IMG/VR virus record: IMGVR_UViG_3300043570_001980 | Location: 62,001 to 126,000 of that record | Direction: 5' to 3' (one strand) | Length of the DNA stretch: 64,000 nucleotides | Shown here: in pieces, positions 36,276-63,937 of the stretch | Numbering within the stretch: position 1 is the first letter of the stretch | Layout: each line of letters opens with the position of its first letter | Translations under genes and position numbers: made by a program | Notes under the pieces: generated by a model | The model's database searches: none | The model's input: only the letters and a program-made list of their open reading frames with translations | Told to the model about the DNA's origin: nothing

Positions 36276-36971
36276 ATGTTTGGTGCAAATTATACTGATA
36301 ATGGTATTGTAAATTACCGCTCAGCAGAAGAAATCAATTCAGCAATGGGTCGTGTGTATGGACACATGAGTCTTGCTGTAATAGTATCAATGTTTGTGAG
36401 TTACTTTGTAGGATCTAGTCCAGAGTTGCTGGCATTCTTTTTTACAGGTTGGTTGAAATGGATTGTGATCTTTTCACCACTTGCGGCAATCTTTGGTGTT
36501 GCTATGGTACTAGGTAACAATCCTACTAAGAGTGTGGCACAGTTATGCTTGCATGGCTTTGCGGCCCTGATGGGCCTGAGTTTTGCAATGATCTTTGCTG
36601 TGTTCACTATGGGATCAATTGTGTCAGCATTTATGGGTGCTGCCATTCTGTTTGGGGTGATGAGTGGCTATGGCTACTTCACCAAACAAAGTCTAGATAG
36701 CATGGGCAAGTTTATGTTTGTTGGACTGATTGCTATTGTTATTGCCAGTATTGTGAATATCTTTATTGGATCAACTGTGATGCAGATGGTGATCTCCGCA
36801 CTAGCAATTATTATCTTCCTTGGATTGACTGCCTATGACACGCAAAAGATTCGTGAAGAACTCAGTACCGAAACCAGCGACGTGGCCGAAGTTCGTGGTG
36901 CGCTGACCTTGTACATGGACTTTATCAACTTGTTCTTGAACCTGTTGCAGTTGTTTGGTGATAGGAAATAA
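36276..36971 (+). CDS. Bax inhibitor-1 / YccA family membrane protein
   Basis: About 7 TM helices; AYDTQKI and ALTLYMDFINLFL. Confidence 0.9.
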   Translation: MFGANYTDNGIVNYRSAEEINSAMGRVYGHMSLAVIVSMFVSYFVGSSPELLAFFFTGWLKWIVIFSPLAAIFGVAMVLGNNPTKSVAQLCLHGFAALMGLSFAMIFAVFTMGSIVSAFMGAAILFGVMSGYGYFTKQSLDSMGKFMFVGLIAIVIASIVNIFIGSTVMQMVISALAIIIFLGLTAYDTQKIREELSTETSDVAEVRGALTLYMDFINLFLNLLQLFGDRK

Positions 36972-39390: not shown

Positions 39391-40587
39391 ATGAGAAAAC
39401 TATTCTACATGGGCTTGGAAAGTTACGAAGCCCGTTACACACTACAACTCACTGAATGGAATCGACGTGTATTTGAACGTCGAGGCATTGATGTAGTGTA
39501 TGTTCCTGGATCCACTATAGACAATACTAAAAGTATTAGTGTAGGACAGGTTTTAGACGCACACGGGCGCAGTTACTTTGGCATGAGTCAGATGATGAAT
39601 CTTGTACAGCTGATGCGTAATGGTGAATGCTCAGGAAAAGATGTTGTGTACTTTGAAGACATGTTCCAGCCAGGCATTGAAAGCTTGCCTTATATCATGA
39701 ATCAGATTCCAACAGAACAAAGACCTCGTGTGTATGTTCGTTGTCTGGCACAGGCTATTGATCCCGACGACTTTGTACATGTATGGGGCATGAGCAAGTG
39801 GATGAGTTTGTATGAACAAATGGTCAATGAATTTGTTACAGGTGTACTGGCTACCAACGAAGAAATGGTAGCCCACATGCGTATTGCCAATTGGACTGCA
39901 CCTATCTACAATATTAGCGGTTTAGCATTTGGCAAAGAAGAAGTGTTAGAACGCATAGGTGGCACAGCAAATATCAAACCATTTGCCGATCGTAAAATGC
40001 GGGTAGGGTTTGCCGCAAGATTTGACCAAGAAAAGCAACCAGGTTTCTTTATGGACCTGGCTGAACGTGTTCAAGAAGAACAGCCTCAGATTAGCTTTGC
40101 TATCTTCTCTGGAGGTCCGTTGCGGTCAAACAATAATAATTATGTAAAACGTGCTCGCAAATTACAAGCTAGTGGATTACTTGAGATTCATGAAAACTTA
40201 ACTAAAAATGAGTATTACTCTCTTCTTAATGACACTCGTGTTCTTTTCAATTGTGCTCTTCAAGACTGGGTGTCAAACACAGTTTCAGAAGCTGACACAC
40301 TTGGCGCTAATGTGCTTTACCCTGCTTATCGTAGTTTTCCAGAAACATTTGCTAACGACCTAGACCGTCTGTACATTCCCTGGAGTGAGGATGATGTAGT
40401 TAGAAAACTTAATAATCTATTAGAAAAATCTCATCATAACATTGGTCTCATCAGTGACTGGAACAACGGAACTATTGATAGAATCTGCGATATCATGCAA
40501 GGCAAAGGAGAGCAATGGAATCGTGCAGGCAATCGATATCGAGACCATGTGGCTGGCGCAAAATATAAAGTTAGGAAAGTTGAATGA
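39391..40587 (+). CDS. GT-B glycosyltransferase
   Basis: GFAARFDQEKQP and EADTLGANVLYP, the C-terminal GT-B nucleotide-sugar motif. Confidence 0.75.
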   Translation: MRKLFYMGLESYEARYTLQLTEWNRRVFERRGIDVVYVPGSTIDNTKSISVGQVLDAHGRSYFGMSQMMNLVQLMRNGECSGKDVVYFEDMFQPGIESLPYIMNQIPTEQRPRVYVRCLAQAIDPDDFVHVWGMSKWMSLYEQMVNEFVTGVLATNEEMVAHMRIANWTAPIYNISGLAFGKEEVLERIGGTANIKPFADRKMRVGFAARFDQEKQPGFFMDLAERVQEEQPQISFAIFSGGPLRSNNNNYVKRARKLQASGLLEIHENLTKNEYYSLLNDTRVLFNCALQDWVSNTVSEADTLGANVLYPAYRSFPETFANDLDRLYIPWSEDDVVRKLNNLLEKSHHNIGLISDWNNGTIDRICDIMQGKGEQWNRAGNRYRDHVAGAKYKVRKVE

Positions 40588-41561
40588 ATGTTGACTCTTA
40601 TAAATTAGTAGTAGTTACTGGTGCTGCCGGGTATATCGGTGGACAAACAATGATTTCGTTAAAGCGGTTAGGGTACATAGTTCTTGGAGTTGATCAGAAT
40701 ACGTTGCCCAAACATTTAATGTTGGTACCAAATCAATTCCATCGAGGGGATTTTGCATCTGAGGAAATCATCAATGTCATCGAGGCCGCCAGGCCAGCCG
40801 CGGTCATTCATTGTGCAGGAACTAGTCTAGTTGGACCCAGTGTTAAGAATCCAAAAGAATACTGGAATAATAACATTGCAAAGAACATACAATTTCTGGA
40901 TAGAATTTGTAGTATTCCAGCAGAATATCGTCCCAAAATTATCTTTAGTAGTAGTGCTAGTGTTTATGGTAATCCAATTATGACTCCTTGTCACGAAGTT
41001 GATCCTTGCGAACCAATTAGTCCATATGGAGAAACAAAACGGGCTATGGAATGGATTTTAGAAGGATATAAAGTAGCTTATGGATTAGAATATGTTGCAT
41101 TCCGATATTTCAATGCCTGCGGTGCAGATAGTAAAATACAGCACGGGCAAGCACCCAATGCAACACACATTATTGCTCGTGTGTTAGAGAGTTTACGGGA
41201 TGGTCAAGAATTCACTCTCAATGGTAACAATTATCCCACTGCTGACAAAACCTGCATTAGAGATTACATTCATGTTGAGGACATTGCACATGCACACATA
41301 TTGGCAATTGATGCAGAACTTCCTAGTGGGACTTATAATCTTGGAACCAGTACAGGATCAAGTAATCAGGACATTATCAATTCAGCAGAAAAAATTACAG
41401 GATTAAAACTACAGGTAAAAATAGGTCCACAAAGAGATGGTGATCCGGAGATCCTGACTGCCAGCGCAGATAAATTTAGTTCTTTAACCAATTGGAAACA
41501 GCAGTTTTCACTAGATGATATAATTAAACATGCCTGGCTTTGGTATAATAGAAAACAGTAA
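40584..41561 (+). CDS. galE: UDP-glucose 4-epimerase-like NAD-dependent epimerase
   Basis: TGAAGYIGG, FSSSASVYG, YGETK, FRYFNACGA, IRDYIHV. Confidence 0.9.
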   Translation: MNVDSYKLVVVTGAAGYIGGQTMISLKRLGYIVLGVDQNTLPKHLMLVPNQFHRGDFASEEIINVIEAARPAAVIHCAGTSLVGPSVKNPKEYWNNNIAKNIQFLDRICSIPAEYRPKIIFSSSASVYGNPIMTPCHEVDPCEPISPYGETKRAMEWILEGYKVAYGLEYVAFRYFNACGADSKIQHGQAPNATHIIARVLESLRDGQEFTLNGNNYPTADKTCIRDYIHVEDIAHAHILAIDAELPSGTYNLGTSTGSSNQDIINSAEKITGLKLQVKIGPQRDGDPEILTASADKFSSLTNWKQQFSLDDIIKHAWLWYNRKQ

Positions 41562-42228
41562 ACTTTGGGTATTTGGACAAAGTATGTCCTTGCCTTACAA
41601 TATTGGGTCACCCGAACATGGATGGCCCAATCTTCTTAGTAAAAAGCTAAATATAGAGTACGAAAATTATGCTCAAGCAGGAGCAGATAATTTTTTCATT
41701 TATCATACGTTTTTAGAAAATCTTAACAGAATTACAGACAACGATTTGGTAATAATTGGATGGAGTCACCCATCACGAAAATCCTTTATCATTGACAATG
41801 ATAACCCAGTACACACAGAAGCTATTAAAAAAAGTTTAGTGTATACCACCAAAACAAAACAGTTATTTCGCAGTAATAACAATTTTCTTAACACACAAAA
41901 AAAGTGGTCAACATTGACTCCTACGTCAACTGGGATCAATTTTTATGATAATTGGTTTGACAATTATTATTCGTTATACGAACAAACCTGCAATTTTCTA
42001 AGTTACACCGATAGTGTAAAATTGCGGTGTCCTGGGACTTATGTTCCGTTTTATTTTAGCAAAGAAAGCACACAAGATTTAAAACTTGTTGGTGCTGGAT
42101 ATATGTTGGATTTCATTGTTGACAACAATGTTGCGATAAGTAAAAATGATTGTCACCTTAATGATTATGGTCACCAAATGTGGTCAGAGCATATTTACAA
42201 TTATATAAAAAAATCAAAAAATGCATAA
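41530..42228 (+). CDS. SGNH-like hypothetical protein
   Basis: VFGQS, GWSHPSR, DCHLNDYGH. Start uncertain. Confidence 0.5.
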   Translation: MPGFGIIENSKLWVFGQSMSLPYNIGSPEHGWPNLLSKKLNIEYENYAQAGADNFFIYHTFLENLNRITDNDLVIIGWSHPSRKSFIIDNDNPVHTEAIKKSLVYTTKTKQLFRSNNNFLNTQKKWSTLTPTSTGINFYDNWFDNYYSLYEQTCNFLSYTDSVKLRCPGTYVPFYFSKESTQDLKLVGAGYMLDFIVDNNVAISKNDCHLNDYGHQMWSEHIYNYIKKSKNA

Positions 42229-44101
42229 TGTTTACTTACTACAGCCCGCACATGGAAATGTGTTTGGCGGAACCGAAGGGTATTGGTTGCCGTATTCTGT
42301 AGGATGCCTTTGGAGTTTTGCTGTACAAAACCCGGTGATTAAAGATAACTTTGCACTTAAAGAGTTGGTCTTTAAAAGAATGTCAATTGACGAAACAATT
42401 AAAAACTTTGATAATCCATCCGTGGCAGCATTTAGTTGTTATGTCTGGAATTACGAATATTGTAAAAAACTAGCCGAGGCTATTAAAGAAAAATGGCCCA
42501 AGTGTCTTATTGTATTTGGTGGACCACAAGTTACTAAATTACCCTATGAAAAATCTTTCTTTAAGAAACATCCATATGTTGATACAATTGTCAATGGTGA
42601 AGGTGAGCCGGCATTTTTAGATATACTATTATCATTATATCATAATAAACCAATTAAAAAAGTTAGTACGTTTGCTAGAATGGCCAACTTAGAGTACCCA
42701 AGCCCATACACATCGGGTGTGTTTGATAAAATAGTCAAGGATAATCCTGAGTATTACTGGCAAGGAGTATTAGAAACCAACCGTGGATGCCCGTATTCAT
42801 GTACTTTTTGTGATTGGGGTAGCTTAACATACAGCAAGGTTCTTAAATTTGCAGAAGATCGGGTACTAGACGAGCTTACTTGGATGGCTAACAATCGTGT
42901 TGCATATTTGTTTATTGCTGATGCAAATTTTGGCATGCTCTATGAAAGAGATAAAAAGTTTGCACAACACATCCATCAATTACAAAACACAAAGGGATTT
43001 CCGCATGTTGTTATTGCCCAATGGGCTAAAAATGCAAAACAAAAAATTATAGAAATTGCAAAAATATTTTTTAGTAATGATAAAAATAGAGGATTTACTG
43101 TCAGTGTGCAAAGCATGAACGACCAAGTTCTCGATGCTATCAAAAGAAAGAATATGGAAATCAGCGATCTTAAAGAAATGCTAGAAGAATGTTTTAAAAA
43201 TGGTATTCCAGCATACACTGAAATGATCCTCGGACTACCCTATGAGACCTATGAAACTTGGAAACAAAATCATGGGCTGATACTCGAGGCCGGGCAACAC
43301 AACAGCCTGGATGTTTGGCTTGCACAATTATTAGAAAACTCAGAACTCAACAGCTATGAGCAACGGACTCTGCACCAGATTGAAAGTATTGCTGTTCCAA
43401 AGTTTGTAACTGGTGCATTAGTTAATGAGGGTGATGATATTATGGAAAAAGAAGTAGTAGTCAAAGCCACAAAGTACATGCCCCTTGAGGATTTTGTTAA
43501 GAGTTATTTGTTTAGTTATATTATAATGACTTATCACTATAGTGGCATCACGCATATTCTAAGTAGGTTCCTAAGAAAACATAAAAATATCAGTTACTAC
43601 GATTTCTATTCTCAAATTGAAAATAAAATTGTTAACGGTCCTAGTACTAGTTTACTGACTCAAGAATACTATAGAATGAAGAATTTTATTGTTTCTTTTT
43701 TAGAAAGTGGCGAAAGTATTATTCCAAACAGGGATGGGCATAGTGCGCTTTGGACCAGTATCCACATATTGTTTGATAATGTTGATTTGACGCTTGAAGA
43801 AATTTATCAAATTATTAACAACGAATTTTGCGAGTTGGATCCTGAAATTTATAAAGAAGTAATGTTGTTGCAATCTGATTATCTACATCATTATGAAGGT
43901 AGTTACCCGTATACTGTTGACTATCAATACAACATTTACGATTATGTGTTCAACAACTCTGACGAATTAAACGTTCCAAACACACTTGAAATTTCGTATC
44001 CATTTAAGCATAAAAACAAACAGGACTTCTTTGAACAATTATATTTTGGTCGACGAGCATCAGTATCAAAAAACAGAATTAACAAAATTGACAATGTTTG
44101 A
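42221..44101 (+). CDS. Cobalamin-binding radical SAM protein
   Basis: B12 domain (FSCYVWN, VFGGP, GEGE) plus RGCPYSCTFC. Confidence 0.88.
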   Translation: MHNVYLLQPAHGNVFGGTEGYWLPYSVGCLWSFAVQNPVIKDNFALKELVFKRMSIDETIKNFDNPSVAAFSCYVWNYEYCKKLAEAIKEKWPKCLIVFGGPQVTKLPYEKSFFKKHPYVDTIVNGEGEPAFLDILLSLYHNKPIKKVSTFARMANLEYPSPYTSGVFDKIVKDNPEYYWQGVLETNRGCPYSCTFCDWGSLTYSKVLKFAEDRVLDELTWMANNRVAYLFIADANFGMLYERDKKFAQHIHQLQNTKGFPHVVIAQWAKNAKQKIIEIAKIFFSNDKNRGFTVSVQSMNDQVLDAIKRKNMEISDLKEMLEECFKNGIPAYTEMILGLPYETYETWKQNHGLILEAGQHNSLDVWLAQLLENSELNSYEQRTLHQIESIAVPKFVTGALVNEGDDIMEKEVVVKATKYMPLEDFVKSYLFSYIIMTYHYSGITHILSRFLRKHKNISYYDFYSQIENKIVNGPSTSLLTQEYYRMKNFIVSFLESGESIIPNRDGHSALWTSIHILFDNVDLTLEEIYQIINNEFCELDPEIYKEVMLLQSDYLHHYEGSYPYTVDYQYNIYDYVFNNSDELNVPNTLEISYPFKHKNKQDFFEQLYFGRRASVSKNRINKIDNV

Positions 44102-44690
44102 CAAAATATTAAAATTTGAACAAGCTCTAGCAGAGTTTACCGGTGCGCCATATGCAATCATGACTGATTGTTGTACGCATGCTATTGAACTGTGTTTGCG
44201 ATACGATCAAGTCAAGGAGTGCAAGTTTACTCCTTATACCTATTTGAGTATTCCAATGACCATGCACAAGTTAGGTATCAAATACGAGTACCTTGATCAT
44301 GCCTGGCAACGCTGGGTCGGCGAATACCCTTTTGTAGGCACACGCATTTGGGATTCAGCACGTAGACTCGAACAAGATATGTATCGTCCGGACACATTGA
44401 CCTGCCTGAGCTTTGGGCATGGCAAACCACTTCACATTGGTCGTGGTGGTGCTATCTTGCTGGATGATGTCGAAGCCTACAATATCATGCTGGCTCAACG
44501 CTACGACGGCAGAGACTTAGCTATCAAGCCATGGGAATCACAGCAGGTGTTCAAGGTGGGTTATCATTACAAGCCCACCATAGAAGAAGCAGAAATTGGT
44601 TTGGACCTGCTCAACGTAATCAAGGTTAATAGGCCGCAACCCGTGTATGTTGATTATCCAGACTGTAGACAAATAACCATTGAGGATTAA
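44094..44690 (+). CDS. Short DegT/DnrJ-like PLP-dependent protein
   Basis: DCCTHAIELCL, WDSA, LSFGHGKPL..GRGG. Start moved to ATG 44094; only 198 aa. Confidence 0.7.
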   Translation: MFDKILKFEQALAEFTGAPYAIMTDCCTHAIELCLRYDQVKECKFTPYTYLSIPMTMHKLGIKYEYLDHAWQRWVGEYPFVGTRIWDSARRLEQDMYRPDTLTCLSFGHGKPLHIGRGGAILLDDVEAYNIMLAQRYDGRDLAIKPWESQQVFKVGYHYKPTIEEAEIGLDLLNVIKVNRPQPVYVDYPDCRQITIED

Positions 44691-44693
44691 AAA

Positions 44694-45233
44694 ATGTTTG
44701 TACAAAAAATTAAACTAGACTATAATTTTGGTATTTTTCTAAATGCCGACTATACCACACACGAAGATACCTGTATCAAACATCAGGTGACCGAAATGGC
44801 TGACATCTATGCATCCTATGGTGGATTGCCAAAAAGTTACTGTTATGAAAATACTAAAATTAATCAACTTTGGTGGACTCCGGATCAGATAGACTTTATA
44901 GAAATTGGTCAACAGTTAGGTATGGAAATTGTCACTATGTCAAGTATTAGACAACAACCTGGCTGTATAACCACCTTGCACAAAGATACATTCTACCAAA
45001 TTAAAAAACGATTTCCTGAACGTACTGAACTAAAAGTCAGAGCCAATGTCTATTTGGAAGATTACAAATTTGGGCAAATGATTCAATACATTTCCCCGGA
45101 CAATACTTTTGAAACCAGTGTTGGTTGGAAACAGGGCGAGGGCTGGATGTGGGATAGTGATATCCAACATCTAAGCTGTAATGCAGGCATGGAAGACAAA
45201 TATACTCTCCAAATTTCAGGCTTTAGGATTTGA
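44694..45233 (+). CDS. Cupin / 2OG-Fe(II) oxygenase-like protein
   Basis: LHKD (HxD) and a distal HLSCNAG. Confidence 0.55.
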   Translation: MFVQKIKLDYNFGIFLNADYTTHEDTCIKHQVTEMADIYASYGGLPKSYCYENTKINQLWWTPDQIDFIEIGQQLGMEIVTMSSIRQQPGCITTLHKDTFYQIKKRFPERTELKVRANVYLEDYKFGQMIQYISPDNTFETSVGWKQGEGWMWDSDIQHLSCNAGMEDKYTLQISGFRI

Positions 45234-45267
45234 CTTTTTTAAATAAATCTGTTAAACTTAATAAATA
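45230..45267 (+). promoter_or_regulatory. Tandem sigma70-type and late-type promoters for folE
   Basis: TTGACT-17 nt-TAAACT, then ATAAATA at 45261. Confidence 0.55.
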
Positions 45268-45329
45268 TTCTTGCTACACAAAGGTAGCAAATATCAAAAT
45301 TTAAAATCCGCGTAAGGAAGGATATCAAT

Positions 45330-46013
45330 ATGTCATACAACAAAACAAAATGCGACCCTGAATTGGGTCTACTAGTACACAAACACTTGGTCAAGTGTGG
45401 TGTAGAAACTCCTACATTTCAACATGCAGTTGATCGTAAAGATAAAATTGAGTTAATCGAAAAAGACTTTAAACATATCATGGAAGTGTTGGGTTTAGAC
45501 CTTAGTGATGATAGTCTAATGGATACACCAAAGCGTGTGGCCAAGATGTATGTTAATGAAATCTTCTGGGGTCTTGACTATGAAGCGTTTCCAAAATGTA
45601 CTACAGTTGACAACAAGATGAAATACGATGAAATGGTTATTGAACGTAATGTCAACGTACAAAGCAATTGCGAACATCACTTTGTTGTGATTGATGGTGT
45701 AGCAACTGTGGGTTACATTCCCAAACAAAAAGTCTTGGGCTTATCTAAGATCAATCGTGTTGTTGAATACTTTAGCAAACGTCCACAAATTCAAGAGCGT
45801 CTGACAGAACAGGTATATCATGCTCTACAATACATTCTTGACACTGATGATATTGCGGTGGTAGTCGATGCTCAACACTATTGTGTAAAGAGTCGCGGCG
45901 TAGAGGACACAGGATCGTCAACAGTTACTAGCAAACTTGGCGGAGTATTCAAGAGTGATCCATCAGTTCGTAACGAGTTTATGAATATTGTTAATGCGTG
46001 TAAAAGAAATTAA
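45330..46013 (+). CDS. folE: GTP cyclohydrolase I
   Basis: DTPKRVAKMY, SNCEHH, GLSK, RPQIQERLT, HYCVKSRG. Confidence 0.95.
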   Translation: MSYNKTKCDPELGLLVHKHLVKCGVETPTFQHAVDRKDKIELIEKDFKHIMEVLGLDLSDDSLMDTPKRVAKMYVNEIFWGLDYEAFPKCTTVDNKMKYDEMVIERNVNVQSNCEHHFVVIDGVATVGYIPKQKVLGLSKINRVVEYFSKRPQIQERLTEQVYHALQYILDTDDIAVVVDAQHYCVKSRGVEDTGSSTVTSKLGGVFKSDPSVRNEFMNIVNACKRN

Positions 46014-46016
46014 TAT

Positions 46017-46709
46017 ATGAATAACGTAAACGAATACAATGTATCCAAATTTAAAGAAGAGTTTCTGAATACAGATTTATACCGGACTCTCGAAAAAGAC
46101 TTTGACCATTTAGTCTGGACCAAACACTGGCCGTATCAAAAACATGCAAGTACTCCTAGACAAATGTGGGGAGATCGGCTACGAGAGACTTATTTTTCTC
46201 TAACACCTTTTTATTATCTAAAACCATTGTTGGAAAAATCTCCGGACACAATATATGATATAGGATGTGGCTGGAATATTTTTAAAAAATATATACCTAA
46301 TATTGTTGGTGTAGATTTCAATGATGACTATCGAGACATTGATGATCAATTTGATGATGAATATGTTAAAAATCATCAACAATATTTTGAATCAGTATTT
46401 TCAATTTGTGCCTTGCATTTTTGTTCATTAACTAAATTTGAGAATCAAATACAACAATTTGTTTCAATGATCAAACCTGGCGGGCGAGGATATCTGGCAT
46501 TAAATTTTCAAAGATTCACTGACTTTACAAGTGAAACTGATTTAATTAAACTTTTTAACACAGCAAAGCCCAACGGTGCAATGTACAATCAGTTTATCCG
46601 TGATGCGTTATCAAATATAGATTGTAATTATTTGATTGTGGACGTTGACATTAGCACTCACAATGAACAAATGGACGGAAATATTCGTATTGTGGTAGAA
46701 GCCAAGTAG
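46017..46709 (+). CDS. Class I SAM-dependent methyltransferase-like protein
   Basis: IYDIGCG motif I; KPGGRGYL. Confidence 0.7.
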   Translation: MNNVNEYNVSKFKEEFLNTDLYRTLEKDFDHLVWTKHWPYQKHASTPRQMWGDRLRETYFSLTPFYYLKPLLEKSPDTIYDIGCGWNIFKKYIPNIVGVDFNDDYRDIDDQFDDEYVKNHQQYFESVFSICALHFCSLTKFENQIQQFVSMIKPGGRGYLALNFQRFTDFTSETDLIKLFNTAKPNGAMYNQFIRDALSNIDCNYLIVDVDISTHNEQMDGNIRIVVEAK

Positions 46710-46718
46710 TCAAGCTTC

Positions 46719-46756
46719 AGCGGTCTTTAGAGCATCATCCCGCTATACAAATTCTG
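46719..46756 (+). ncRNA. Candidate preQ1-I-like H-type pseudoknot aptamer upstream of queD
   Basis: P1 AGCGG/CCGCT; C immediately before the P1 3' strand; A-rich tail ATACAAA; P2 TAGAG/TTCTG. Confidence 0.4.
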
Positions 46757-46790
46757 CTGTCTATGCTATAATTTAACATAGGAGAAAAGC

Positions 46791-47324
46791 ATGTCAGACA
46801 ATTTTAACGCAGTAGTCGAGCAAAAGTATCGTCCGGTGACCTACAAGTTTACCAGTACCAAAGAGTACATTGATGCATTTCCGTGTGCCTACCGACAGTG
46901 GAGAGCCGACAGTCATTGTAACTTGAATCATGGTTACTCGTTTAGTATGAAGTTTTACTTTGGTACCAACCACCTTGACGTCCGCAACTGGGCCGCTGAC
47001 TATGGTGGTCTCAAAGAACTTAAAAAGATTTTAGAAGATCAATTTGATCACACAACCTTGGTCAGTGCCGATGATCCGGAACTAGAATTCTACAAAGAAA
47101 TGGAACGTCGTAAACTGGCCAAGCTCACAATCTTGCCCCGAGTTGGATGTGAATCACTTGCAGACATGCTGTACAAGTATGTGAACGGTGTTTACATTCC
47201 TGACTTTTGGGGAGAGTACGAAGCAAGTCGTTTATGGTGCTACCGAGTGGAAGTGCGTGAAACACAAGCAAACATGGCTTTTAGAGAAGGCCATAGAGAA
47301 TGGAACGAGGATTTATTTGAATGA
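46791..47324 (+). CDS. queD: 6-carboxytetrahydropterin synthase-like (QueD) protein
   Basis: HCNLNHGY (CxxxHG), DYGGLKELK, FDHTTL, EVRET; strong aggaga SD. Confidence 0.8.
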   Translation: MSDNFNAVVEQKYRPVTYKFTSTKEYIDAFPCAYRQWRADSHCNLNHGYSFSMKFYFGTNHLDVRNWAADYGGLKELKKILEDQFDHTTLVSADDPELEFYKEMERRKLAKLTILPRVGCESLADMLYKYVNGVYIPDFWGEYEASRLWCYRVEVRETQANMAFREGHREWNEDLFE

Positions 47325-48163
47325 AATTAATTGAAATACCAGCTTTAATTTTAGAGCCAAAATATGATGTGGCTGTATTATTACCCACACGAGGACGCAC
47401 AACTGCATTGCTCGATAGTCTAAACAGCCTGATTGACCACGCCGATGATGTAAAATCAATACAAATTTTACTGGGCATGGATGATGATGACACAGAGTCT
47501 ATTGAGTGGGCGGCAAAAAATATTTTTAAAGATTTTGACAGTCGAGGTATTTCAACGTCAATATTGGAATTTAAACCGGTTGGCTACACTCGCTTGAATG
47601 AATATGTAACAGCACTGGCTAAAAAAAGCAATGCACGTTGGTTAATGTTCTGGAACGACGATGCACTCATGCAAACACAGGGCTGGGACAGTCGAATAAA
47701 AGAGCACACCGGTAAGTTTCGTGTGTTGAGAATGCCCACACACAATGAACACCCTTATGCTGTATTTCCAATTGTGCCAAGAGATTGGTTAATGTTATTT
47801 GATTATCTAAGCGCACATCAACTTTCCGACGCATGGATTAGTCAGATTGCCTATATATTGAATATCATGGAAACTATTTCCGTTGATGTACTACACGATC
47901 GACACGACCTAACCGGTAATAATAACGACGAAACTTTTCAGAATAGAATTATGTACGAGGGTCGGCCTGAAGATCCTAGAGACTTTAATCACTTTGACCA
48001 TCGACGTCAACGCTTTTTAGATGCTAGTCGAATTGCTTGGTTTATGCATGCTCGAGGTGAAGATGTTAGTTGGTTTATGAATGTACTGGCAAACAAACAA
48101 GACCCGTGGGTTAGAATGCTTGATGAGTTTGACCCAAATAAACAAATGGCAAAATTTAATTAA
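47321..48163 (+). CDS. GT2-family glycosyltransferase
   Basis: VLLPTRGR, LGMDDDD, FWNDD. Confidence 0.75.
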   Translation: MKLIEIPALILEPKYDVAVLLPTRGRTTALLDSLNSLIDHADDVKSIQILLGMDDDDTESIEWAAKNIFKDFDSRGISTSILEFKPVGYTRLNEYVTALAKKSNARWLMFWNDDALMQTQGWDSRIKEHTGKFRVLRMPTHNEHPYAVFPIVPRDWLMLFDYLSAHQLSDAWISQIAYILNIMETISVDVLHDRHDLTGNNNDETFQNRIMYEGRPEDPRDFNHFDHRRQRFLDASRIAWFMHARGEDVSWFMNVLANKQDPWVRMLDEFDPNKQMAKFN

Positions 48164-48165
48164 TT

Positions 48166-48936
48166 ATGGACTTACAAAAAAGAATTCTTGACTACTGGAA
48201 CACACAACCATGTAATGTTGGGCACAGTAGTGCTACCATTGGCTCTGAACAGTACTTTGACGAAGTAACAAGCAAACGATATCGTGCTGAACCACACATC
48301 CTTGATTTTGCTGGATTTCACAGTTGGCGAGGTAAACGTGTATTAGAAATTGGATGTGGTATTGGCACGGATGCTGAACAGTTTGCTCGTCACGGTGCCG
48401 AATACGTGGGCATTGATTTGTCAGATGCCAGTTTAGATTTGTGCAAGCAAAGATTCAATGTCTATGACCTCGAAGGTGAGTTTTACAATATTGACATCAC
48501 TGACCGCAAAGTGTTAGACTTAGGACAATTTGATTTGGTCTACAGCTACGGAGTCCTGCATCATTACCCAGGCATGCAAGATCATATTAAAACTGTTGCC
48601 AGTTTGTTAACACCCGACGGCGAGTTTAGATTTATGGTCTATGCCAAAAACTCCTGGAAGTATGCTATGATTCGAAAAGGTCTAGATCAATTTGAAGCTC
48701 AGGCAAATTGTCCTTATGCAGAAGCATATACTTCAGAAGAAATACACGAGTTGCTAAAAGAAGATTTCGATGTGTTACGCTTACGACAAAGTCATTGCTT
48801 TATGTATAATGTAGAAAAATACAAGCAGGGTATTTTTGAACTTGAGCCGTGGTTTGAAGCAATGCCCGAATTAATGAGAGAAGCAGTTAAAGAATATTTA
48901 GGCTGGCATCTTTTGGTAAAAGCAAAGAAGTTATGA
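48166..48936 (+). CDS. Class I SAM-dependent methyltransferase
   Basis: VLEIGCGIG, GIDLS, FDLVYSYGVLHH, LTPDG. Confidence 0.88.
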   Translation: MDLQKRILDYWNTQPCNVGHSSATIGSEQYFDEVTSKRYRAEPHILDFAGFHSWRGKRVLEIGCGIGTDAEQFARHGAEYVGIDLSDASLDLCKQRFNVYDLEGEFYNIDITDRKVLDLGQFDLVYSYGVLHHYPGMQDHIKTVASLLTPDGEFRFMVYAKNSWKYAMIRKGLDQFEAQANCPYAEAYTSEEIHELLKEDFDVLRLRQSHCFMYNVEKYKQGIFELEPWFEAMPELMREAVKEYLGWHLLVKAKKL

Positions 48937-49211
48937 ACTCAAAAATAAACGAAGTGATGGATATCCTCCAGGAAGAGTGTGCTGAGGTTATACAAATTGT
49001 AAGCAAGATACGTAGATTTGGCATAGATGAAATTCATCTGAAACGTGGAATGTCCAATAGAGAAATGTTGTGCGAAGAAGTAGGCGATGTACTGTGCATG
49101 GTTGAATTGCTTAGAGAACTTAAAATTATTGATGATGCTAGTATACAAGCCGCTGTTCAAAATAAAAGAAAAAAGTTACAGCAGTGGTCAACCATATATG
49201 AAAGCCAGTGA
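48933..49211 (+). CDS. MazG-like nucleotide pyrophosphohydrolase
   Basis: EECAE...EEVGDV. Confidence 0.75.
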   Translation: MNSKINEVMDILQEECAEVIQIVSKIRRFGIDEIHLKRGMSNREMLCEEVGDVLCMVELLRELKIIDDASIQAAVQNKRKKLQQWSTIYESQ

Positions 49212-50046
49212 CATCAAATGGCTTCATGTTGAAGCTAGTTCAAAATGCAATGCTTGGTGTCCGGCTTGTCCCAGAAACAACAATGGATATGGATTGAAGC
49301 CAGGACTGGTTGAACAAGATCTTGAAACTGATCGGTTAGCTGATATTCTAAATCAACTGCCAATGTTGGACGGCATACAATTTTGCGGAAACTACGGTGA
49401 TCCAGTGATAGCTCACAATTTTATTGAATTGATTAAACTTGCTAAACGTCACACTCAAAAAATACAAATACATACCAACGGTAGCTTAAGAACTACTGCA
49501 TGGTGGAAAGATTTAGCAAATTTATTAACTGACATCAATCATGACGTTTGGTTTGGTATAGATGGGCTAAAAGGTGTACACGAAATATATCGGCAAGGCA
49601 CAGACTATAACAAAGTAATTGAAAATGCCAAGGCATTTATATCAGCTGGTGGAACAGCAACATGGCAATTTATACCATATGCACACAACGAACATCAGGT
49701 TAAAGATTGTATACGCACTAGCCAAAAACTAGGATTTAAACATTTTAAATTGGTTAAATTATATCGCAATCGTCAATTGGCCAAAAATTATAGAACTGGA
49801 GAGGAATTTGATCTTTTACCACCGGTGGAATTTCAACATCTGATACGTATGCCAAAAATATCAACTGTGGTTGATCCAAAAAATTGTATACATTTATTGC
49901 CGCCTTCGATGTATCTAGCCGCATCAGGAAAACTGAGTACATGTTGTTTTTTTGCTCCAGTAGAAAAATTTGACAGCATTGACGAATTACTGTATAATAA
50001 ACTAGATCTAACACACAATCAGTGTTTGATATCATGTGGAACATAA
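49198..50046 (+). CDS. Radical SAM protein
   Basis: KCNAWCPAC, GNYGDP, HTNG. Start moved to ATG 49198. Confidence 0.8.
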   Translation: MKASDIKWLHVEASSKCNAWCPACPRNNNGYGLKPGLVEQDLETDRLADILNQLPMLDGIQFCGNYGDPVIAHNFIELIKLAKRHTQKIQIHTNGSLRTTAWWKDLANLLTDINHDVWFGIDGLKGVHEIYRQGTDYNKVIENAKAFISAGGTATWQFIPYAHNEHQVKDCIRTSQKLGFKHFKLVKLYRNRQLAKNYRTGEEFDLLPPVEFQHLIRMPKISTVVDPKNCIHLLPPSMYLAASGKLSTCCFFAPVEKFDSIDELLYNKLDLTHNQCLISCGT

Positions 50047-50047
50047 T

Positions 50048-50929
50048 ATGAAAATAAAAGTAAGCGAACTGTTTTACTCCGCACAAGGTGAAGGACGCTT
50101 TGTTGGTGTACCCAGTGTTTTTTTACGCACATTTGGCTGTAACTTTAAATGTGCAGGATTTGGTATGCCCCCAGGGGAAGTGAGTCATGAAGCCACTGAC
50201 ATTGCGGCAACTCACAAATTGATCCAGCCTTTTAAAAAGTTTGAAGACTTGCCATTGGTCAATACCGGCTGTGACAGTTATGCCAGCTGGCATCCGGACT
50301 TTAAAGACCTAAGTCCAACTATTGATAACAATAAGCTGGTAGATCAAATGTTGGCATTGACACCCAATCACAAATGGGTACAAGACAATGGTAATGATGT
50401 ACATTTGGTTATCACAGGTGGTGAGCCGTTGTTGGGATGGCAACGTGCATATGAAGAATTAATTAGTAACCCAAACATGGGAGATTTGCGTAACATTACA
50501 TTTGAAACCAATGGTACTCAAAAATTGCAACCCAGTTTTAAAGATTTCATGCACGAATGGCAACGAGCTCCATTGGGCGGCAAGAAAGATCGCGAAATTA
50601 CATTTTCAGTCAGTGCCAAGCTCAGTGCCAGCGGTGAGAGTTGGGAGGAAGCAATCTGTCCTGACATTGTTGCCAGCTATCAAGCACTAGGCACAGTATA
50701 TCTCAAATTTGTTGTTGAAACCAACGAACATTTTGCAGAAGTAGAACGTGCAGTTAAAGAATTTAGAGCAGGTGGATTTACCGGTGTTGTTTACGTTATG
50801 CCACAGGGTGGTGTGGTTACTCCTTATGCGCAGAATCGTGTTCGTGTGGCAGACTGGGCATGCAGTCGTGGTTATTACTACAGTCCAAGACTACACGTTG
50901 ACCTATGGGGCAACGGATGGGGGAAATAA
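50048..50929 (+). CDS. queE: 7-carboxy-7-deazaguanine synthase
   Basis: SELFYSAQGEG...FLRTFGCNFKC...CDS, ITGGEP, FETNG, SPRLHVDLWG. Confidence 0.92.
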   Translation: MKIKVSELFYSAQGEGRFVGVPSVFLRTFGCNFKCAGFGMPPGEVSHEATDIAATHKLIQPFKKFEDLPLVNTGCDSYASWHPDFKDLSPTIDNNKLVDQMLALTPNHKWVQDNGNDVHLVITGGEPLLGWQRAYEELISNPNMGDLRNITFETNGTQKLQPSFKDFMHEWQRAPLGGKKDREITFSVSAKLSASGESWEEAICPDIVASYQALGTVYLKFVVETNEHFAEVERAVKEFRAGGFTGVVYVMPQGGVVTPYAQNRVRVADWACSRGYYYSPRLHVDLWGNGWGK

Positions 50930-50930
50930 A

Positions 50931-51194
50931 ATGAATTTTGTTTTAAATTACATTAAGTCTCATGTGCCACAAATGGAAATGATTGGGGTTATCATGCGTA
51001 TCATTAGTTTTAGTTTGGTGTCATGGTTAGGCCCGGCTAGTCCGTTTATGTTTGTATGGGTATTCAATACTTTAGATGCTATTCTATTAACATATTGTGC
51101 TAGACTAAAGAGAGATCCAGCATACACGCTGTTAAATGCTTTCTGGATCCTAGTTGGGATCATTGGGATTGCTAGAGCAGGAGGGTGGGCATAA
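50931..51194 (+). CDS. Small membrane protein
   Basis: Three hydrophobic segments; ATG 50931. Confidence 0.55.
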   Translation: MNFVLNYIKSHVPQMEMIGVIMRIISFSLVSWLGPASPFMFVWVFNTLDAILLTYCARLKRDPAYTLLNAFWILVGIIGIARAGGWA

Positions 51195-51569
51195 ATGAAA
51201 CTGTTTGACAAGTTCTTTAAGAAAAAAACAAAACAACCCGAGCAACCAAAAGAAGCAAAGGCTCCTAAGAAAACAGAAAAAGAGTTAGCTACTGAACGTG
51301 GAGAGCCTTATGTGGCAATACTAGGTTTAGAAATTGATGCCAATAATATGCATCAAGGTGCATTTGACCTTGACTGGAATGAAAAATTTGTAGCCAATCT
51401 GCTACGTGCAGGATATGCGGGAAAAACAGATGCTGACATAGTCGACCAATGGTTCCAAAATGTCTGCAGACATGTGGTGATGGAAACATGGGAACAAGAG
51501 CAGGCAATGAATCCCAATACATACACCAGAGAACGAGACCTAGGCGGCGGAAGAAAAGAAATTTCATGA
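51195..51569 (+). CDS. Hypothetical protein
   Basis: Coupled ORF of 124 aa. Confidence 0.6.
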   Translation: MKLFDKFFKKKTKQPEQPKEAKAPKKTEKELATERGEPYVAILGLEIDANNMHQGAFDLDWNEKFVANLLRAGYAGKTDADIVDQWFQNVCRHVVMETWEQEQAMNPNTYTRERDLGGGRKEIS

Positions 51570-52051
51570 TTTTCAATCACATTAAACAACTCAAAGCAGA
51601 CGGTAAAAAAATTGGCATCACGTTCTCGACCTTTGACATGCTACACGCAGGGCATATTGCCATGCTCAGTGAAGCAAAGAATCACTGCGATTACTTGATA
51701 TGCGGACTACAAACAGACCCTACCATTGATCGTCCTGATACTAAAAATCATCCTGTGCAAAGTATTGTTGAGAGACAAATACAGTTGGCAGCCTGCCGCT
51801 ATGTAGACGAAGTTGTGGTGTACCAAACCGAGCAAGATCTAATTGACCTGTTGTTGATCCTGCCACTGGATGTGCGTATCTTGGGTGTAGAATATGCTGA
51901 GAAAGAGTTCTCAGGACAAGGCGAATGCTATGACAGAGGCATTGAAATTGTGTTTAACAAACGTGATCATAGTTTCAGTAGTTCGAGTTTAAGGAAGCGG
52001 GTAGTTCACGCAGAAACATTTAAGGTATTAAAAGATGGAAATCCAACCTAA
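51566..52051 (+). CDS. Cytidylyltransferase (TagD/RfaE-like)
   Basis: TFSTFDMLHAGH, GLQTDP, YVDEV; ATG 51566. Confidence 0.88.
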   Translation: MIFNHIKQLKADGKKIGITFSTFDMLHAGHIAMLSEAKNHCDYLICGLQTDPTIDRPDTKNHPVQSIVERQIQLAACRYVDEVVVYQTEQDLIDLLLILPLDVRILGVEYAEKEFSGQGECYDRGIEIVFNKRDHSFSSSSLRKRVVHAETFKVLKDGNPT

Positions 52052-56873: not shown

Positions 56874-56951
56874 GGGCCGTTAGCTCATGTTGGTTAGAGC
56901 AGTGGACTCATAATCCATTGGTGCTGTGTTCGACTCACAGACGGCCCACCA
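56874..56951 (+). tRNA. tRNA with CAT anticodon, most like tRNA-Ile2 (lysidine)
   Basis: Cloverleaf GGGCCGT/ACGGCCC, loop CTCATAA, TTCGA, encoded CCA. Resembles ileX rather than Met tRNAs. Confidence 0.85.
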
Positions 56952-56958
56952 GACAATT

Positions 56959-57045
56959 GCGACTGTGGTGAAATAGGTAGACACAAGAGACTTAAAATCT
57001 CTCGCTCGCAAGGGCATGCCGGTTCGATTCCGGCCAGTCGCACCA
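56959..57045 (+). tRNA. tRNA-Leu(TAA)
   Basis: GCGACTG/CAGTCGC acceptor, AGAGA-CTTAAAA-TCTCT, long variable arm, CCA. Confidence 0.93.
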
Positions 57046-57050
57046 ACAAC

Positions 57051-57125
57051 CTGGCCTTAGTTCAATGGACAGAACAGTAGCCTTCTAAGCTATCAATACA
57101 GGTTCGATTCCTGTAGGCCGGACCA
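57051..57125 (+). tRNA. tRNA-Arg(TCT)
   Basis: CTGGCCT/AGGCCGG, GTAGC-CTTCTAA-GCTAT, TTCGA, CCA. Confidence 0.92.
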
Positions 57126-63693: not shown

Positions 63694-63783
63694 GGAGCGG
63701 TGGCCGAACGGTAAGGCAGCGGATTGCTAATCCGTACAACGTGTTAAAGCGTTGACTGGGTTCGACTCCCAGTCGCTCCGCCA
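63694..63783 (+). tRNA. tRNA-Ser(GCT)
   Basis: GGAGCGG/TCGCTCC, loop TTGCTAA, long variable arm, GCCA end. Confidence 0.93.
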
Positions 63784-63789
63784 AGTTTT

Positions 63790-63854
63790 GAGAGTCACAT
63801 CGCCTGGATACTTCCTTTGGTAACAAAGCACTAGGTCCTGCAACCGTGGCTCTC
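63790..63854 (+). ncRNA. Candidate small structured RNA between tRNA genes
   Basis: GAGAGTCAC/GTGGCTCTC, CCTGG/CTAGG, CTTTG-GTAA-CAAAG. Confidence 0.45.
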
Positions 63855-63862
63855 CCTTATTT

Positions 63863-63937
63863 GCTCGATTCGTCTATCGGTTAGGACATGCGGTTTTCAT
63901 CCGCATAAGAGCGGTTCGACTCCGCTATCGAGTACCA
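63863..63937 (+). tRNA. tRNA-Glu(TTC)
   Basis: GCTCGAT/ATCGAGT, TGCGG-TTTTCAT-CCGCA, TTCGA, CCA. Confidence 0.93.

What the first reader, a model, noticed from the sequence alone, without database searches (positions are those of the whole stretch)
46719..46793. preQ1-I-like pseudoknot upstream of queD: candidate variant riboswitch for a deazaguanine
Seen: P1 AGCGG/CCGCT; loop starts UC and ends in C just before P1; A-rich tail AUACAAA; P2 UAGAG/UUCUG. The same UUCU can alternatively pair with the SD region AGAA, extending the CUAUG/CAUAG stem. Known: preQ1-I aptamers (B. subtilis queC AGAGGUUCUAGCUACACCCUCUAUAAAAAACUAA) have this topology and use that C to pair the ligand. The loop here is longer (16 nt). 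Inference: it may sense CDG, 7-deazaguanine or preQ0. Caveat: TGCTATAAT at 46764 could be an extended -10 promoter that bypasses it.
Basis: partly seen in the sequence, partly recalled or inferred. Interest (0 to 1): 0.72.

Follow-up and report, generated by a model that had tools for sequence, protein, structure and literature searches.

The report
Phage queD leader pseudoknot, riboswitch candidate
The leader of this lake phage's queD gene holds a small, strongly conserved RNA pseudoknot that resembles preQ1-I riboswitches but does not match that family, recurs in front of queD in hundreds of uncultured phages, and is probably an undescribed metabolite sensor that controls queD translation, with a promoter built into it that can bypass it.

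Summary
P1 (46719-23 with 46740-44), the UC-start and C-end loop, the A-rich tail and TGCTATAAT are all present. The proposed P2 (UAGAG/UUCUG) is not conserved: 67% of cells paired and 0 of 5 pairs compensatory. The conserved P2 joins 46732-37 to 46755-60 across an invariant U.C. On 130 distinct phage leaders, P1 plus this P2 is 92.9% paired, with a covariation score of 0.383 against 0.109 shuffled (0/500).

A pattern scan that left three P1 pairs unspecified returned 120 viral matches. 114 had a perfect P1 and 117 lay just upstream of QueD homologues that are 32-91% identical to the window's. The same pattern in cellular genomes gave mostly noise.

No Rfam family matches, not even PreQ1 at E<=10. 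Several preQ1-I defining features are not met.

In all three leader types the P2 3' strand also belongs to a stem that hides the SD or AUG, so ligand-stabilised P2 should turn translation ON (inferred).

In the window's leader type, a sigma-70 promoter (TATACA, 17 nt, TGcTATAAT) sits inside the element. Other types carry the promoter just upstream instead, placing +1 at P1.

The ligand is unknown.

The parts
46719..46723 (+). P1 5' strand (AGCGG)
   Evidence: Pairs with 46740-46744. Across 130 distinct leaders it is 99.2% paired, 3 of 5 pairs show compensatory changes, and the two top G-C pairs never vary.
46724..46731 (+). L1 (UCUUUAGA): variable first base, invariant C46725, near-invariant U46726, then a linker of variable length
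   Evidence: First base is U/C/A in 54/52/29 leaders. In the AGCGG class across all IMG/VR there are 0 variants with a non-C at position 2 and only 3 with a non-U at position 3.
46732..46737 (+). P2 5' strand (GCAUCA), with U46735 opposite C46757
   Evidence: All 6 pairs show changes on both sides, with 87.6% of cells paired. U.C occurs in 130/130 leaders. Own loop/tail duplex energy is -6.17 against -4.74 kcal/mol when permuted, z = -11.3.
46738..46739 (+). L2 (UC). C46739 is the candidate ligand-pairing base.
   Evidence: C in 135/135 leaders, preceded by U 111, C 14 or A 10. A dedicated scan of IMG/VR found 0 non-C variants in the AGCGG class.
46740..46744 (+). P1 3' strand (CCGCU)
46745..46754 (+). 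L3 (AUACAAAUUC): A-rich, with three invariant A and an invariant UC at its end
   Evidence: Invariant columns in the QueD-selected alignment A1, where only one A, the TC and the final C were imposed by the filter.
46755..46760 (+). P2 3' strand (UGCUGU). This is the switching strand, also used by the downstream sequestering stem.
46760..46782 (+). P3 hairpin: (U46760.G46782), CUAUG 46761-65 with CAUAG 46777-81. It covers A46780-G46782 of the SD.
   Evidence: Found as CCUAUG/CAUAGG in nearly all 116 type-1 leaders, with compensatory variants in L152 (CCUAUA/UAUAGG) and L193.
46744..46772 (+). Embedded sigma-70-type promoter: -35 TATACA 46744-49, 17-nt spacer, TG 46764-65, -10 TATAAT 46767-72. 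Predicted start is near 46779.
   Evidence: It is the best promoter-like site in 45000-48500, at 10/12 with TG. TGnTAnnnT is kept in the P3 loop while the rest of the loop varies. It scores >=9/12 with TG in 90 of 98 type-1 leaders and in none of 56 type-2/3 leaders, which carry an upstream promoter instead.
46780..46793 (+). Shine-Dalgarno AGGAG (46780-84) and start codon ATG (46791-93)
46791..47324 (+). QueD-like 6-pyruvoyl-tetrahydropterin synthase family gene (177 aa), the regulated gene
   Evidence: Pfam PTPS 2.5e-14; PHROG QueD-like 1e-34. It is the only PTPS-family gene in the record and in four near-complete relatives.

Best explanation
The leader carries a roughly 42-nt H-type RNA pseudoknot at 46719-46760.

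Anatomy:
- A 5-bp P1 topped by two invariant G-C pairs.
- A long L1 (N-C-U plus a linker).
- A 6-10-bp P2 made from the 3' part of the loop and the strand that follows an A-rich 10-nt L3. P2 is interrupted by an invariant U.C juxtaposition.
- A 2-3-nt L2 ending in an invariant C next to P1.

It is the aptamer of a phage-specific riboswitch candidate dedicated to queD. It looks like preQ1-I but is not a member by the tests run here.

Inferred mechanism: a small ligand with a guanine-like face binds at the P1/P2 junction. Candidates are a 7-deazaguanine such as CDG, preQ0 or 7-deazaguanine, or a pterin such as H2NTP or CPH4. Binding would stabilise P2. The distal part of the P2 3' strand is also the 5' arm of a stem that hides the SD (the window's leader type) or the AUG (two other types). 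A stabilised P2 therefore frees the ribosome-binding site, and queD translation goes ON.

In the window's leader type a sigma-70 promoter lies inside the element, with -35 in L3 and -10 in the P3 loop. Only read-through transcripts from the upstream folE-containing genes carry the sensor. Transcripts starting near 46779 escape it.

Shown: the structure, its conservation, its gene association and the promoter geometry. Inferred: ligand binding, ligand identity and the direction of the switch.
For: 1. Prevalence. 73 of 77 QueD-selected IMG/VR loci with enough upstream sequence carry the motif, plus L047 with a 1-nt longer L1.

2. Specificity. 114 had a perfect P1 and 117 lay directly upstream of a QueD-like ORF. 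The same pattern in 596 Gb of cellular genomes gave 11 perfect P1 among 121 matches and only 2 true-looking sites.

3. Covariation. 92.9% of cells are paired. The score is 0.383 against 0.109 shuffled (0/500), and 0.03-0.07 when the partners are slid. 9 of 11 pairs show compensatory changes. This also holds within type-1 leaders alone: 78% against 57% shuffled, maximum 65%.

4. Island of conservation. Pairwise identity is 0.78-0.85 inside the element against 0.32-0.43 in the flanks. The downstream QueD proteins diverge to 32% identity.

5. Copy number. One copy and one PTPS gene per genome in four genomes of 331-382 kb that are 95-100% complete.

6. Transcript start. In 39 of 156 distinct upstream regions a >=10/12 promoter ends 5-9 nt before P1, exactly 7 nt in 23 of them. 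Controls gave 0/181. The RNA therefore starts at P1.

7. Key loop bases are strictly kept.

8. Switch logic. With the P2 3' strand free, the AUG is unpaired with probability 0.01-0.02 (types 2 and 3) and the SD with 0.40 (type 1). With the strand sequestered, the SD is about 0.7 unpaired. P2 (-6 to -7.7 kcal/mol) roughly balances the loss in P3 (4.4-6.8 kcal/mol). The base at -1 of the AUG co-varies with the arm between types: C-G against U-A.

9. RNA libraries. Metatranscriptome contigs of relatives cover the aptamer and run more than 150 nt upstream of it.
Against:
- No Rfam family matches, so the fold has no validated relative.
- The P3 stem of type 1 is almost invariant, so its RNA role rests on two variant sequences and on analogy with types 2 and 3.
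- In the window itself P2 is weak (five pairs, one of them a wobble) and overlaps P3 by one or two bases, so coupling is weaker than in relatives.
- The embedded promoter could supply most queD mRNA and make the sensor marginal in this phage.
- ON logic for a biosynthetic gene is unusual if the ligand is the pathway product.
- Part of the reported invariance was imposed by my search patterns: C-U in L1, the C before P1, and A3/A5/A7, UC and GC in the tail.
- The RNA-library contigs carry no strand information and may include DNA.
Confidence: 0.65

Rival explanations
1. It is a true but very divergent preQ1-I riboswitch (a fourth subtype) that binds preQ1 or preQ0 in the class-I alpha mode.
For: It shares the H-type topology, the G-C floor, the UC/AC-type dinucleotide before the P1 3' strand, the A-rich L3 and a conserved C in the 3' tail, as in type I. 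These features are listed in PMC11625349 and seen. It is associated with a queuosine-pathway gene.
Against: The PreQ1 covariance model does not match, even at E<=10 on 121-201-nt slices of three leader types, nor at gathering score in 20 loci. The first L1 base is not a conserved U. L3 ends in UC rather than A. P2 is 6-10 bp with an invariant U.C and does not contain the SD. Loop proportions are inverted, with a long L1 and a 2-3-nt L2. These phages show no QueC over the cut-off, so preQ0 and preQ1 may not be made by them.
Confidence: 0.15
2. It is a ligand-independent structured leader. The pseudoknot would stabilise the mRNA 5' end or act as an operator for a phage or host RNA-binding protein that times queD translation.
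For: In types 2 and 3 it sits exactly at the transcript 5' end. P2 is long enough (-6 kcal/mol) to form without a ligand.
Against: There is one copy per 330-380-kb genome and it always lies at queD. A generic stabiliser would be used more widely. About 13 loop nucleotides are strictly conserved while the QueD proteins diverge to 32% identity. That fits an unchanging small ligand better than a co-evolving protein.
Confidence: 0.14
3. The conservation is at the DNA level: a promoter with a palindromic operator around its -10 element. Any RNA structure would be incidental.
For: In type-1 leaders L3 doubles as a -35 and the P3 loop as an extended -10. The P3 arms form an inverted repeat around the -10.
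Against: Types 2 and 3 keep the same aptamer without any internal promoter. The interleaved (pseudoknotted) complementarity of P1 and P2 with compensatory changes, also within type 1, has no DNA-binding explanation. P3 partners in types 2 and 3 lie 20-35 nt apart and include the AUG.
Confidence: 0.04

Closest known systems
preQ1-I riboswitch (Rfam RF00522; types I-III)
   Same: Small H-type pseudoknot with a 5-bp P1 closed by a conserved G-C. A cytosine lies directly 5' of the P1 3' strand, preceded by U (as in type I) or A (types II and III). It has an A-rich L3, a conserved C in the 3' tail (type I), and an association with 7-deazaguanine pathway genes (PMC11625349).
   Different: No covariance-model match. 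L1 is N-C-U plus a linker, not U or UU. L2 is only 2-3 nt. P2 is 6-10 bp with an invariant U.C and does not include the SD. L3 ends in UC. The expression platform predicts ON, not OFF. It is found in phages only.
preQ1-II and preQ1-III riboswitches
   Same: These read the ligand with a conserved C and a conserved U (the gamma mode). The invariant U46735.C46757 juxtaposition could play such a role, but this is speculation.
   Different: Those are HLout pseudoknots of about 80-100 nt with an embedded hairpin. No Rfam match was found here, and the size and topology differ.
Translational ON riboswitches such as the Vibrio vulnificus add adenine riboswitch (from general knowledge)
   Same: A strand of the aptamer competes with a helix that hides the ribosome-binding site. 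Ligand binding frees the site.
   Different: That one has a three-way-junction purine fold, a different ligand pocket, and a cellular rather than viral origin.
Phage 7-deazaguanine DNA-modification gene sets (Hutinet 2019, PMC6884629; Cui 2023, PMC10516641)
   Same: FolE, QueD and QueE are encoded together. A QueC-less set is known from Cellulophaga phage phiST, which makes 7-deazaguanine DNA.
   Different: Neither paper uses the word riboswitch (occurrence counts of 0). Here no TGT/DpdA Pfam match was found in four near-complete relatives, although DpdA3-type proteins are too distant for that test.

Membership tests
preQ1-I riboswitch (RF00522) | Scores at or above the Rfam gathering threshold with the PreQ1 covariance model | tested here: not met
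   No hit at gathering score in the window or in 20 related loci. No PreQ1 hit even at E<=10 on 121-201-nt slices of type 1, 2 and 3 leaders.
preQ1-I riboswitch (RF00522) | H-type pseudoknot: P1 hairpin whose loop pairs with the 3' tail (P2) | tested here: met
   P1 is 99.2% and P2 87.6% paired over 130 sequences, and 9 of 11 pairs are compensatory.
preQ1-I riboswitch (RF00522) | Cytosine specificity base directly 5' of the P1 3' strand, preceded by U (type I) or A (types II/III) | tested here: met
   C in 135/135 leaders, preceded by U 111, C 14 or A 10. There are 0 non-C variants of the AGCGG class in IMG/VR. Its role in binding is not testable here.
preQ1-I riboswitch (RF00522) | Conserved G-C closing pair of P1 as the pocket floor | tested here: met
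   G-C in 130/130 at both top pairs. These are also invariant in alignment A1, where they were not imposed.
preQ1-I riboswitch (RF00522) | Conserved U as the first L1 base (U6; UU in types I and III) | tested here: not met
   The first L1 base is U 54, C 52 or A 29. The conserved bases are C then U at positions 2-3.
preQ1-I riboswitch (RF00522) | A-rich L3 whose last adenine reads the ligand just before the P2 3' strand | tested here: inconclusive
   L3 is A-rich with three invariant A, but it ends in an invariant U-C before P2. Type I has a conserved tail C.
preQ1-I riboswitch (RF00522) | Short P2 (about 3-4 pairs) that contains SD bases or feeds a terminator; OFF switch | tested here: not met
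   P2 spans 6-10 positions with an internal U.C. The SD lies 20-30 nt downstream. P2 competes with an SD/AUG-sequestering stem.
preQ1-I riboswitch (RF00522) | Binds preQ1 (and preQ0) selectively | not testable with these tools
   Needs in-line probing or ITC.
preQ1-II / preQ1-III riboswitches (RF01054, RF02680) | Covariance-model match; HLout pseudoknot with an embedded hairpin | tested here: not met
   No Rfam hits. The element is about 42 nt and has no embedded hairpin.
Sigma-70 extended -10 promoter (embedded, type-1 leaders) | -35-like hexamer, 16-18-nt spacer, TGn, and a -10 with conserved T1, A2 and T6 | tested here: met
   The window has TATACA, 17 nt, TGcTATAAT, scoring 10/12. 90 of 98 type-1 leaders score >=9/12 with TG. 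The loop varies except at TAnnnT.
Sigma-70 extended -10 promoter (embedded, type-1 leaders) | Transcripts start about 7 nt downstream of the -10 (near 46779) | not testable with these tools
   The RNA-library data are contigs without ends or strand.

The most novel reading that the evidence does not exclude
This is a new riboswitch class, confined to uncultured freshwater jumbo phages. It does not sense preQ1 but another guanine-faced pathway metabolite (CDG, 7-deazaguanine, or the pterin substrate/product of QueD). It switches queD translation ON. If so, it would be the first riboswitch governing a viral 7-deazapurine pathway, and it would carry a promoter nested inside the aptamer/platform so that one gene gets both sensed and unsensed mRNAs.
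Probability: 0.35. Interest if true: 0.9.

Novelty: new variant of a known kind. Interest (0 to 1): 0.78.

Why it matters
Riboswitches in phages are few, and none is known for the 7-deazaguanine pathways that phages use to modify their DNA against host restriction.

It is tiny (about 42 nt), has clean covariation and strictly conserved loop bases, and precedes QueD proteins that have diverged to 32% identity. That makes it an unusually good candidate for ligand discovery.

The phages that carry it have FolE, QueD and QueE but no recognisable QueC or TGT/DpdA. The ligand could therefore point to unknown deazapurine chemistry.

The ON-type platform and the nested promoter would both be new for preQ1-like pseudoknots.

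A 45-60-nt synthetic RNA and a handful of commercially available or easily made ligands would settle the matter.

Tried and rejected
67% of cells paired and no compensatory change.
- UUCU/AGAA extension of the hairpin: not predicted by folding and not testable by covariation.
- Alternative P2 in the window between AGCAU 46731-35 and AUGCU 46763-67 (RNAduplex optimum, -4.5 kcal/mol): rejected. AUGC never varies in type-1 leaders while the loop varies, whereas the UGCC/CGCC/CACC register covaries.
- Long-range pairing UGUCU 46758-62 with AGACA 46797-801 in the window's MFE: not kept in the close relative L002, so probably fortuitous.
- Nested MFE folding of the leader: uninformative (z = -0.37), because it cannot model pseudoknots.
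- G.U against A.C asymmetry as a strand test: uninformative, 30 against 28 cells.
- blastn of the leader against 50,697 isolate phage records: only a chance-level hit, so no cultured carrier was found.
- tblastn of the two flanking ORFs against isolates: no match.
- Weak Rfam hits (mir-9460, ceN69, freshwater-2 at 13.5 bits against a gathering score of 49.9): chance level.
- Literature searches for a phage queD, preQ0 or deazaguanine riboswitch: nothing found in the held library. McCown 2014 and Eichhorn 2014 were not held.
- The first MAFFT alignment (A1) misplaced the L2 indel. It was used only for its invariant columns; pairs were counted on A2.
- No covariance model was built.

Full report
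**Where it lies.** The window is part of a 128.8-kb IMG/VR virus record estimated to be 35% complete. The sequence is found in many lake-water metagenomes. The finding sits in the 81-nt gap between an unknown ORF (46017-46709, a class I methyltransferase-like protein) and a PTPS/QueD-like ORF (46791-47324; Pfam 2.5e-14, PHROG QueD-like 1e-34). GTP cyclohydrolase I (folE) is at 45330-46013 and a QueE-like radical-SAM gene at 50036-50929.

**Checking the observation.** Taken alone, the sequence is unremarkable: the nested MFE has z = -0.37. No Rfam family reaches its gathering score in the window. A permissive scan of 46650-46850 at E<=10 returns only two chance-level hits and no PreQ1.

**Relatives.** Searching IMG/VR with the QueD protein gave 596 confirmed loci, of which the best 80 were kept. 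Of the 77 with enough upstream sequence, 73 carry the same leader element under a strict filter. One more (L047) has it with a 1-nt longer L1, and three lack it.

To remove the bias of selecting by gene, I scanned IMG/VR with a pattern that fixes only the loop and tail signature and leaves three P1 pairs free.
114 have a perfect 5-bp P1 and six have 4 of 5 pairs.
- 117 of the 120 lie immediately upstream of a QueD-like ORF by phmmer.
- In the exceptions another ORF intervenes (a cupin in L150, an unknown 243-aa ORF in L164; L040 from the QueD-selected set is similar) or the start codon is altered (L180).
- The same pattern in 596 Gb of bacterial and archaeal genomes acts as a negative control. 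Only 11 of 121 matches have a perfect P1, and only two look real (L254 and L295; L254 is a 5.5-kb contig of a metagenome bin).
- The pattern occurs once in the window, against 0.00 expected, and once in each of four relatives of 331-382 kb that are 95-100% complete.

**Structure.** There are 194 instances and 135 distinct aptamers.
- P1 occurs as AGCGG/CCGCU (89), UGCGG/CCGCA (13), AGAGG/CCUCU (10), ACCGG/CCGGU (8), AGUGG/CCACU (6) and AUCGG/CCGAU (4).
UUCUG hardly varies while its proposed partner does: 67.3% of cells paired and no pair with a change on both sides.
- The 3' part of the loop instead pairs with the strand that follows the conserved YUC. Examples are GGCA-U-CA with UG-C-UGCC, GGCG/CGCC, GGUG/CACC, GACAA/UUGUC and ACGAC/GUCGU. 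The inner pairs change from CA/UG to CG/CG or UA/UA.
- On a MAFFT alignment of 130 distinct sequences (A2), P1 plus this P2 is 92.9% paired. 9 of 11 pairs have changes on both sides. The covariation score is 0.383 against 0.109 in shuffles (0 of 500 reach it) and 0.03-0.07 when partners are slid by 1-3 columns.
- Each sequence's own loop and tail pair better than permuted ones: -6.17 against -4.74 kcal/mol, z = -11.3.
- An invariant U faces an invariant C inside P2 in 130/130 sequences (the C was fixed by my pattern, the U was not).

In window coordinates:
- P1: 46719-23 with 46740-44
- L1: 46724-31
- P2: 46732-37 with 46755-60
- L2: U46738, C46739
- L3: 46745-54

The window's P2 is a weak version, with a G.U wobble and an A.C or bulged A where relatives have G-C pairs.

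**Conservation.** The element is an island. Mean pairwise identity is 0.78-0.85 inside it, 0.32 just upstream and 0.38-0.43 downstream. The QueD proteins behind it range from 91% down to 32% identity to the window's and include several subfamilies.

Part of the invariance was imposed by my filters. I therefore scanned IMG/VR for AGCGG-class members with a changed key base:
- none has a non-C before the P1 3' strand;
- none has a non-C at L1 position 2;
- three (two identical) have a non-U at L1 position 3.

**It is RNA, and often the very 5' end.** In 39 of 156 distinct upstream regions a sigma-70-type promoter scoring >=10/12 ends 5-9 nt before the first base of P1, exactly 7 nt in 23 of them. 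Control windows 330-400 nt upstream gave 0 of 181. Contigs from four metatranscriptome libraries cover the aptamer of relatives, and some continue 150-255 nt upstream of it. These are contigs without strand or ends and may contain DNA, so this is weak support.

**Expression platforms and direction.** Three leader types share the aptamer.
- Type 1 (116 instances, including the window) has a CCUAUG...CAUAGG hairpin covering the first bases of the SD.
- Type 2 (50 instances) pairs GYCRUC with GAUGGC.
- Type 3 (21 instances) pairs GYCAUUG with CAAUGGC.

In types 2 and 3 the stem contains the start codon. The base at -1 of the AUG differs between those two types and its partner changes with it, C-G against U-A. 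In every type the 5' arm of this stem includes the last 2-6 nt of the P2 3' strand, so P2 and the sequestering stem exclude each other.

Partition-function folding gives these figures:
- With the P2 strand free, the AUG is unpaired with probability 0.02 (type 2) and 0.01 (type 3), and the SD with 0.40 (type 1).
- With the strand withheld, as in a formed pseudoknot, the SD is about 0.7 unpaired and the AUG 0.33-0.38.
- The energy of P2 (-6.0 to -7.7 kcal/mol) is close to what the platform loses (4.4-6.8 kcal/mol).

That is the arrangement of a thermodynamic switch in which ligand-stabilised P2 turns translation ON. This is inference. No ligand or reporter test was possible.

**The nested promoter.** The best promoter-like site between 45000 and 48500 is TATACA (46744-49), 17 nt, TG (46764-65), TATAAT (46767-72).
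- In type-1 leaders the hairpin loop keeps TGnTAnnnT while the rest of the loop varies in sequence and length.
- L3 reads TTTACA or TATACA at 17-18 nt from the -10.
- Of 98 distinct type-1 leaders, 90 have this internal promoter (>=9/12 with TG) and only 2 have a strong upstream one.
- Of 56 type-2/3 leaders, none has an internal promoter and 34 have a strong upstream one.

The promoter is therefore either just in front of the aptamer or built into it. Within type 1 the aptamer still shows compensatory change: 78% paired against 57% shuffled, maximum 65% in 2000 shuffles. It is thus still used as RNA, presumably on read-through transcripts from the upstream genes. In the window the previous ORF ends 9 nt before P1. 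Transcripts from the internal promoter would start near 46779 and lack the sensor.

**Comparison with known families.** The defining features of class I preQ1 riboswitches come from PMC11625349.
- Shared: the H-type fold, the G-C floor, the cytosine preceded by U or A before the P1 3' strand, the A-rich L3 and, as in type I, a conserved C in the tail.
- Different: the first L1 base is not a conserved U; L1 is long and L2 short; L3 ends in UC; P2 is long, holds an invariant U.C and does not contain the SD; the platform predicts ON.

The PreQ1 model finds nothing even at E<=10 in all three leader types. No Rfam family reaches its gathering score in 20 loci. I therefore file it as preQ1-I-like in architecture but not as a member.

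Searches of the held literature found no description of a phage queD, preQ0 or deazaguanine riboswitch. The library is not exhaustive.

**Ligand.** Unknown. The four near-complete relatives have one PTPS gene each, no QueC over the Pfam cut-off and no TGT-family match. DpdA3-type proteins are known to be too distant for such a test, and QueC-less phages such as phiST make 7-deazaguanine DNA. The phage-made pool may therefore stop at CDG or a derivative rather than preQ0 or preQ1. An ON switch on the first committed enzyme fits a precursor or signal (for example the pterin substrate) at least as well as an end product. Both deazaguanines and pterins offer the 2-amino-4-oxo face that could pair with the invariant C.

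**Verdict.** The feature is real and conserved. Most probably it is an undescribed phage-specific riboswitch candidate related in architecture to preQ1-I. It has a corrected P2, a likely ON platform, and, in this window's type, a bypassing promoter nested inside it.

Noticed in passing
window 45330-50929; relatives G001-G004: FolE, a single QueD-like gene and a QueE-like gene are present. No QueC over the Pfam cut-off and no TGT/DpdA Pfam match were found in four relatives that are 95-100% complete. The pathway may end at CDG or a derivative, or it may use a transglycosylase too distant for Pfam, like DpdA3 of phage phiST.
   Followed up: partly
window 46791-47324 (QueD-like), residues around 'HCNLNHGY': The window's QueD-like protein and several of the motif-associated QueD-like proteins printed read CxxxHGY where canonical QueD has CxxxHGH (motif as quoted in PMC10516641). 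A minority (e.g. L163) keep HGH. This may be a distinct T-fold subfamily.
   Followed up: no
window 39391-52051: The deazapurine genes sit among sugar and modification genes: GT1-like (39391), NAD epimerase/dehydratase (40584), a 626-aa B12-binding radical-SAM protein (42221), a DegT-like piece (43986-44690, overlapping the previous ORF by about 115 nt), a methyltransferase-like ORF (46017), GT2-like (47321), a methyltransferase (48166), a MazG-like NTP pyrophosphohydrolase (48933), a second radical-SAM protein (49087) and a cytidylyltransferase-like ORF (51449). This suggests an elaborate hypermodification or glycan cluster.
   Followed up: partly
window 36276-36971: A phage-encoded Bax inhibitor-1 / YccA-family membrane protein (Pfam Bax1-I, 6e-54).
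   Followed up: no
window 56874-57122 and 63694-63934: Five tRNA genes in two clusters, consistent with a jumbo phage.
   Followed up: no
L040 2062-3534; L164 4352-5160; L150 6412-6829: In a few phages an extra ORF lies between the leader motif and queD, or directly after the motif: 293 aa in L040, 243 aa with no Pfam match in L164, and a 113-aa cupin in L150. These may be insertions, or additional regulated genes.
   Followed up: partly
type-2 leaders, e.g. L010 2958-3000: The block CAAACUUGCUACCUUACAAAGGAGACUAGAGAUGGC between P2 and the start codon is itself highly conserved across type-2 leaders, beyond what the AUG-sequestering stem needs. The reason is unknown.
   Followed up: no
L254 (about 2515-2550 on the + strand, motif on the - strand; 5.5-kb contig of an uncultured Bacteroidetes MAG) and L295 (motif on the - strand; 8000-nt locus): These are the only two genuine-looking motif copies among the 120 genome contigs matches. 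L254 lies on a 5.5-kb contig of a metagenome bin; L295's record was not shown. They are probably mis-binned phage DNA, but could hint at the host.
   Followed up: no
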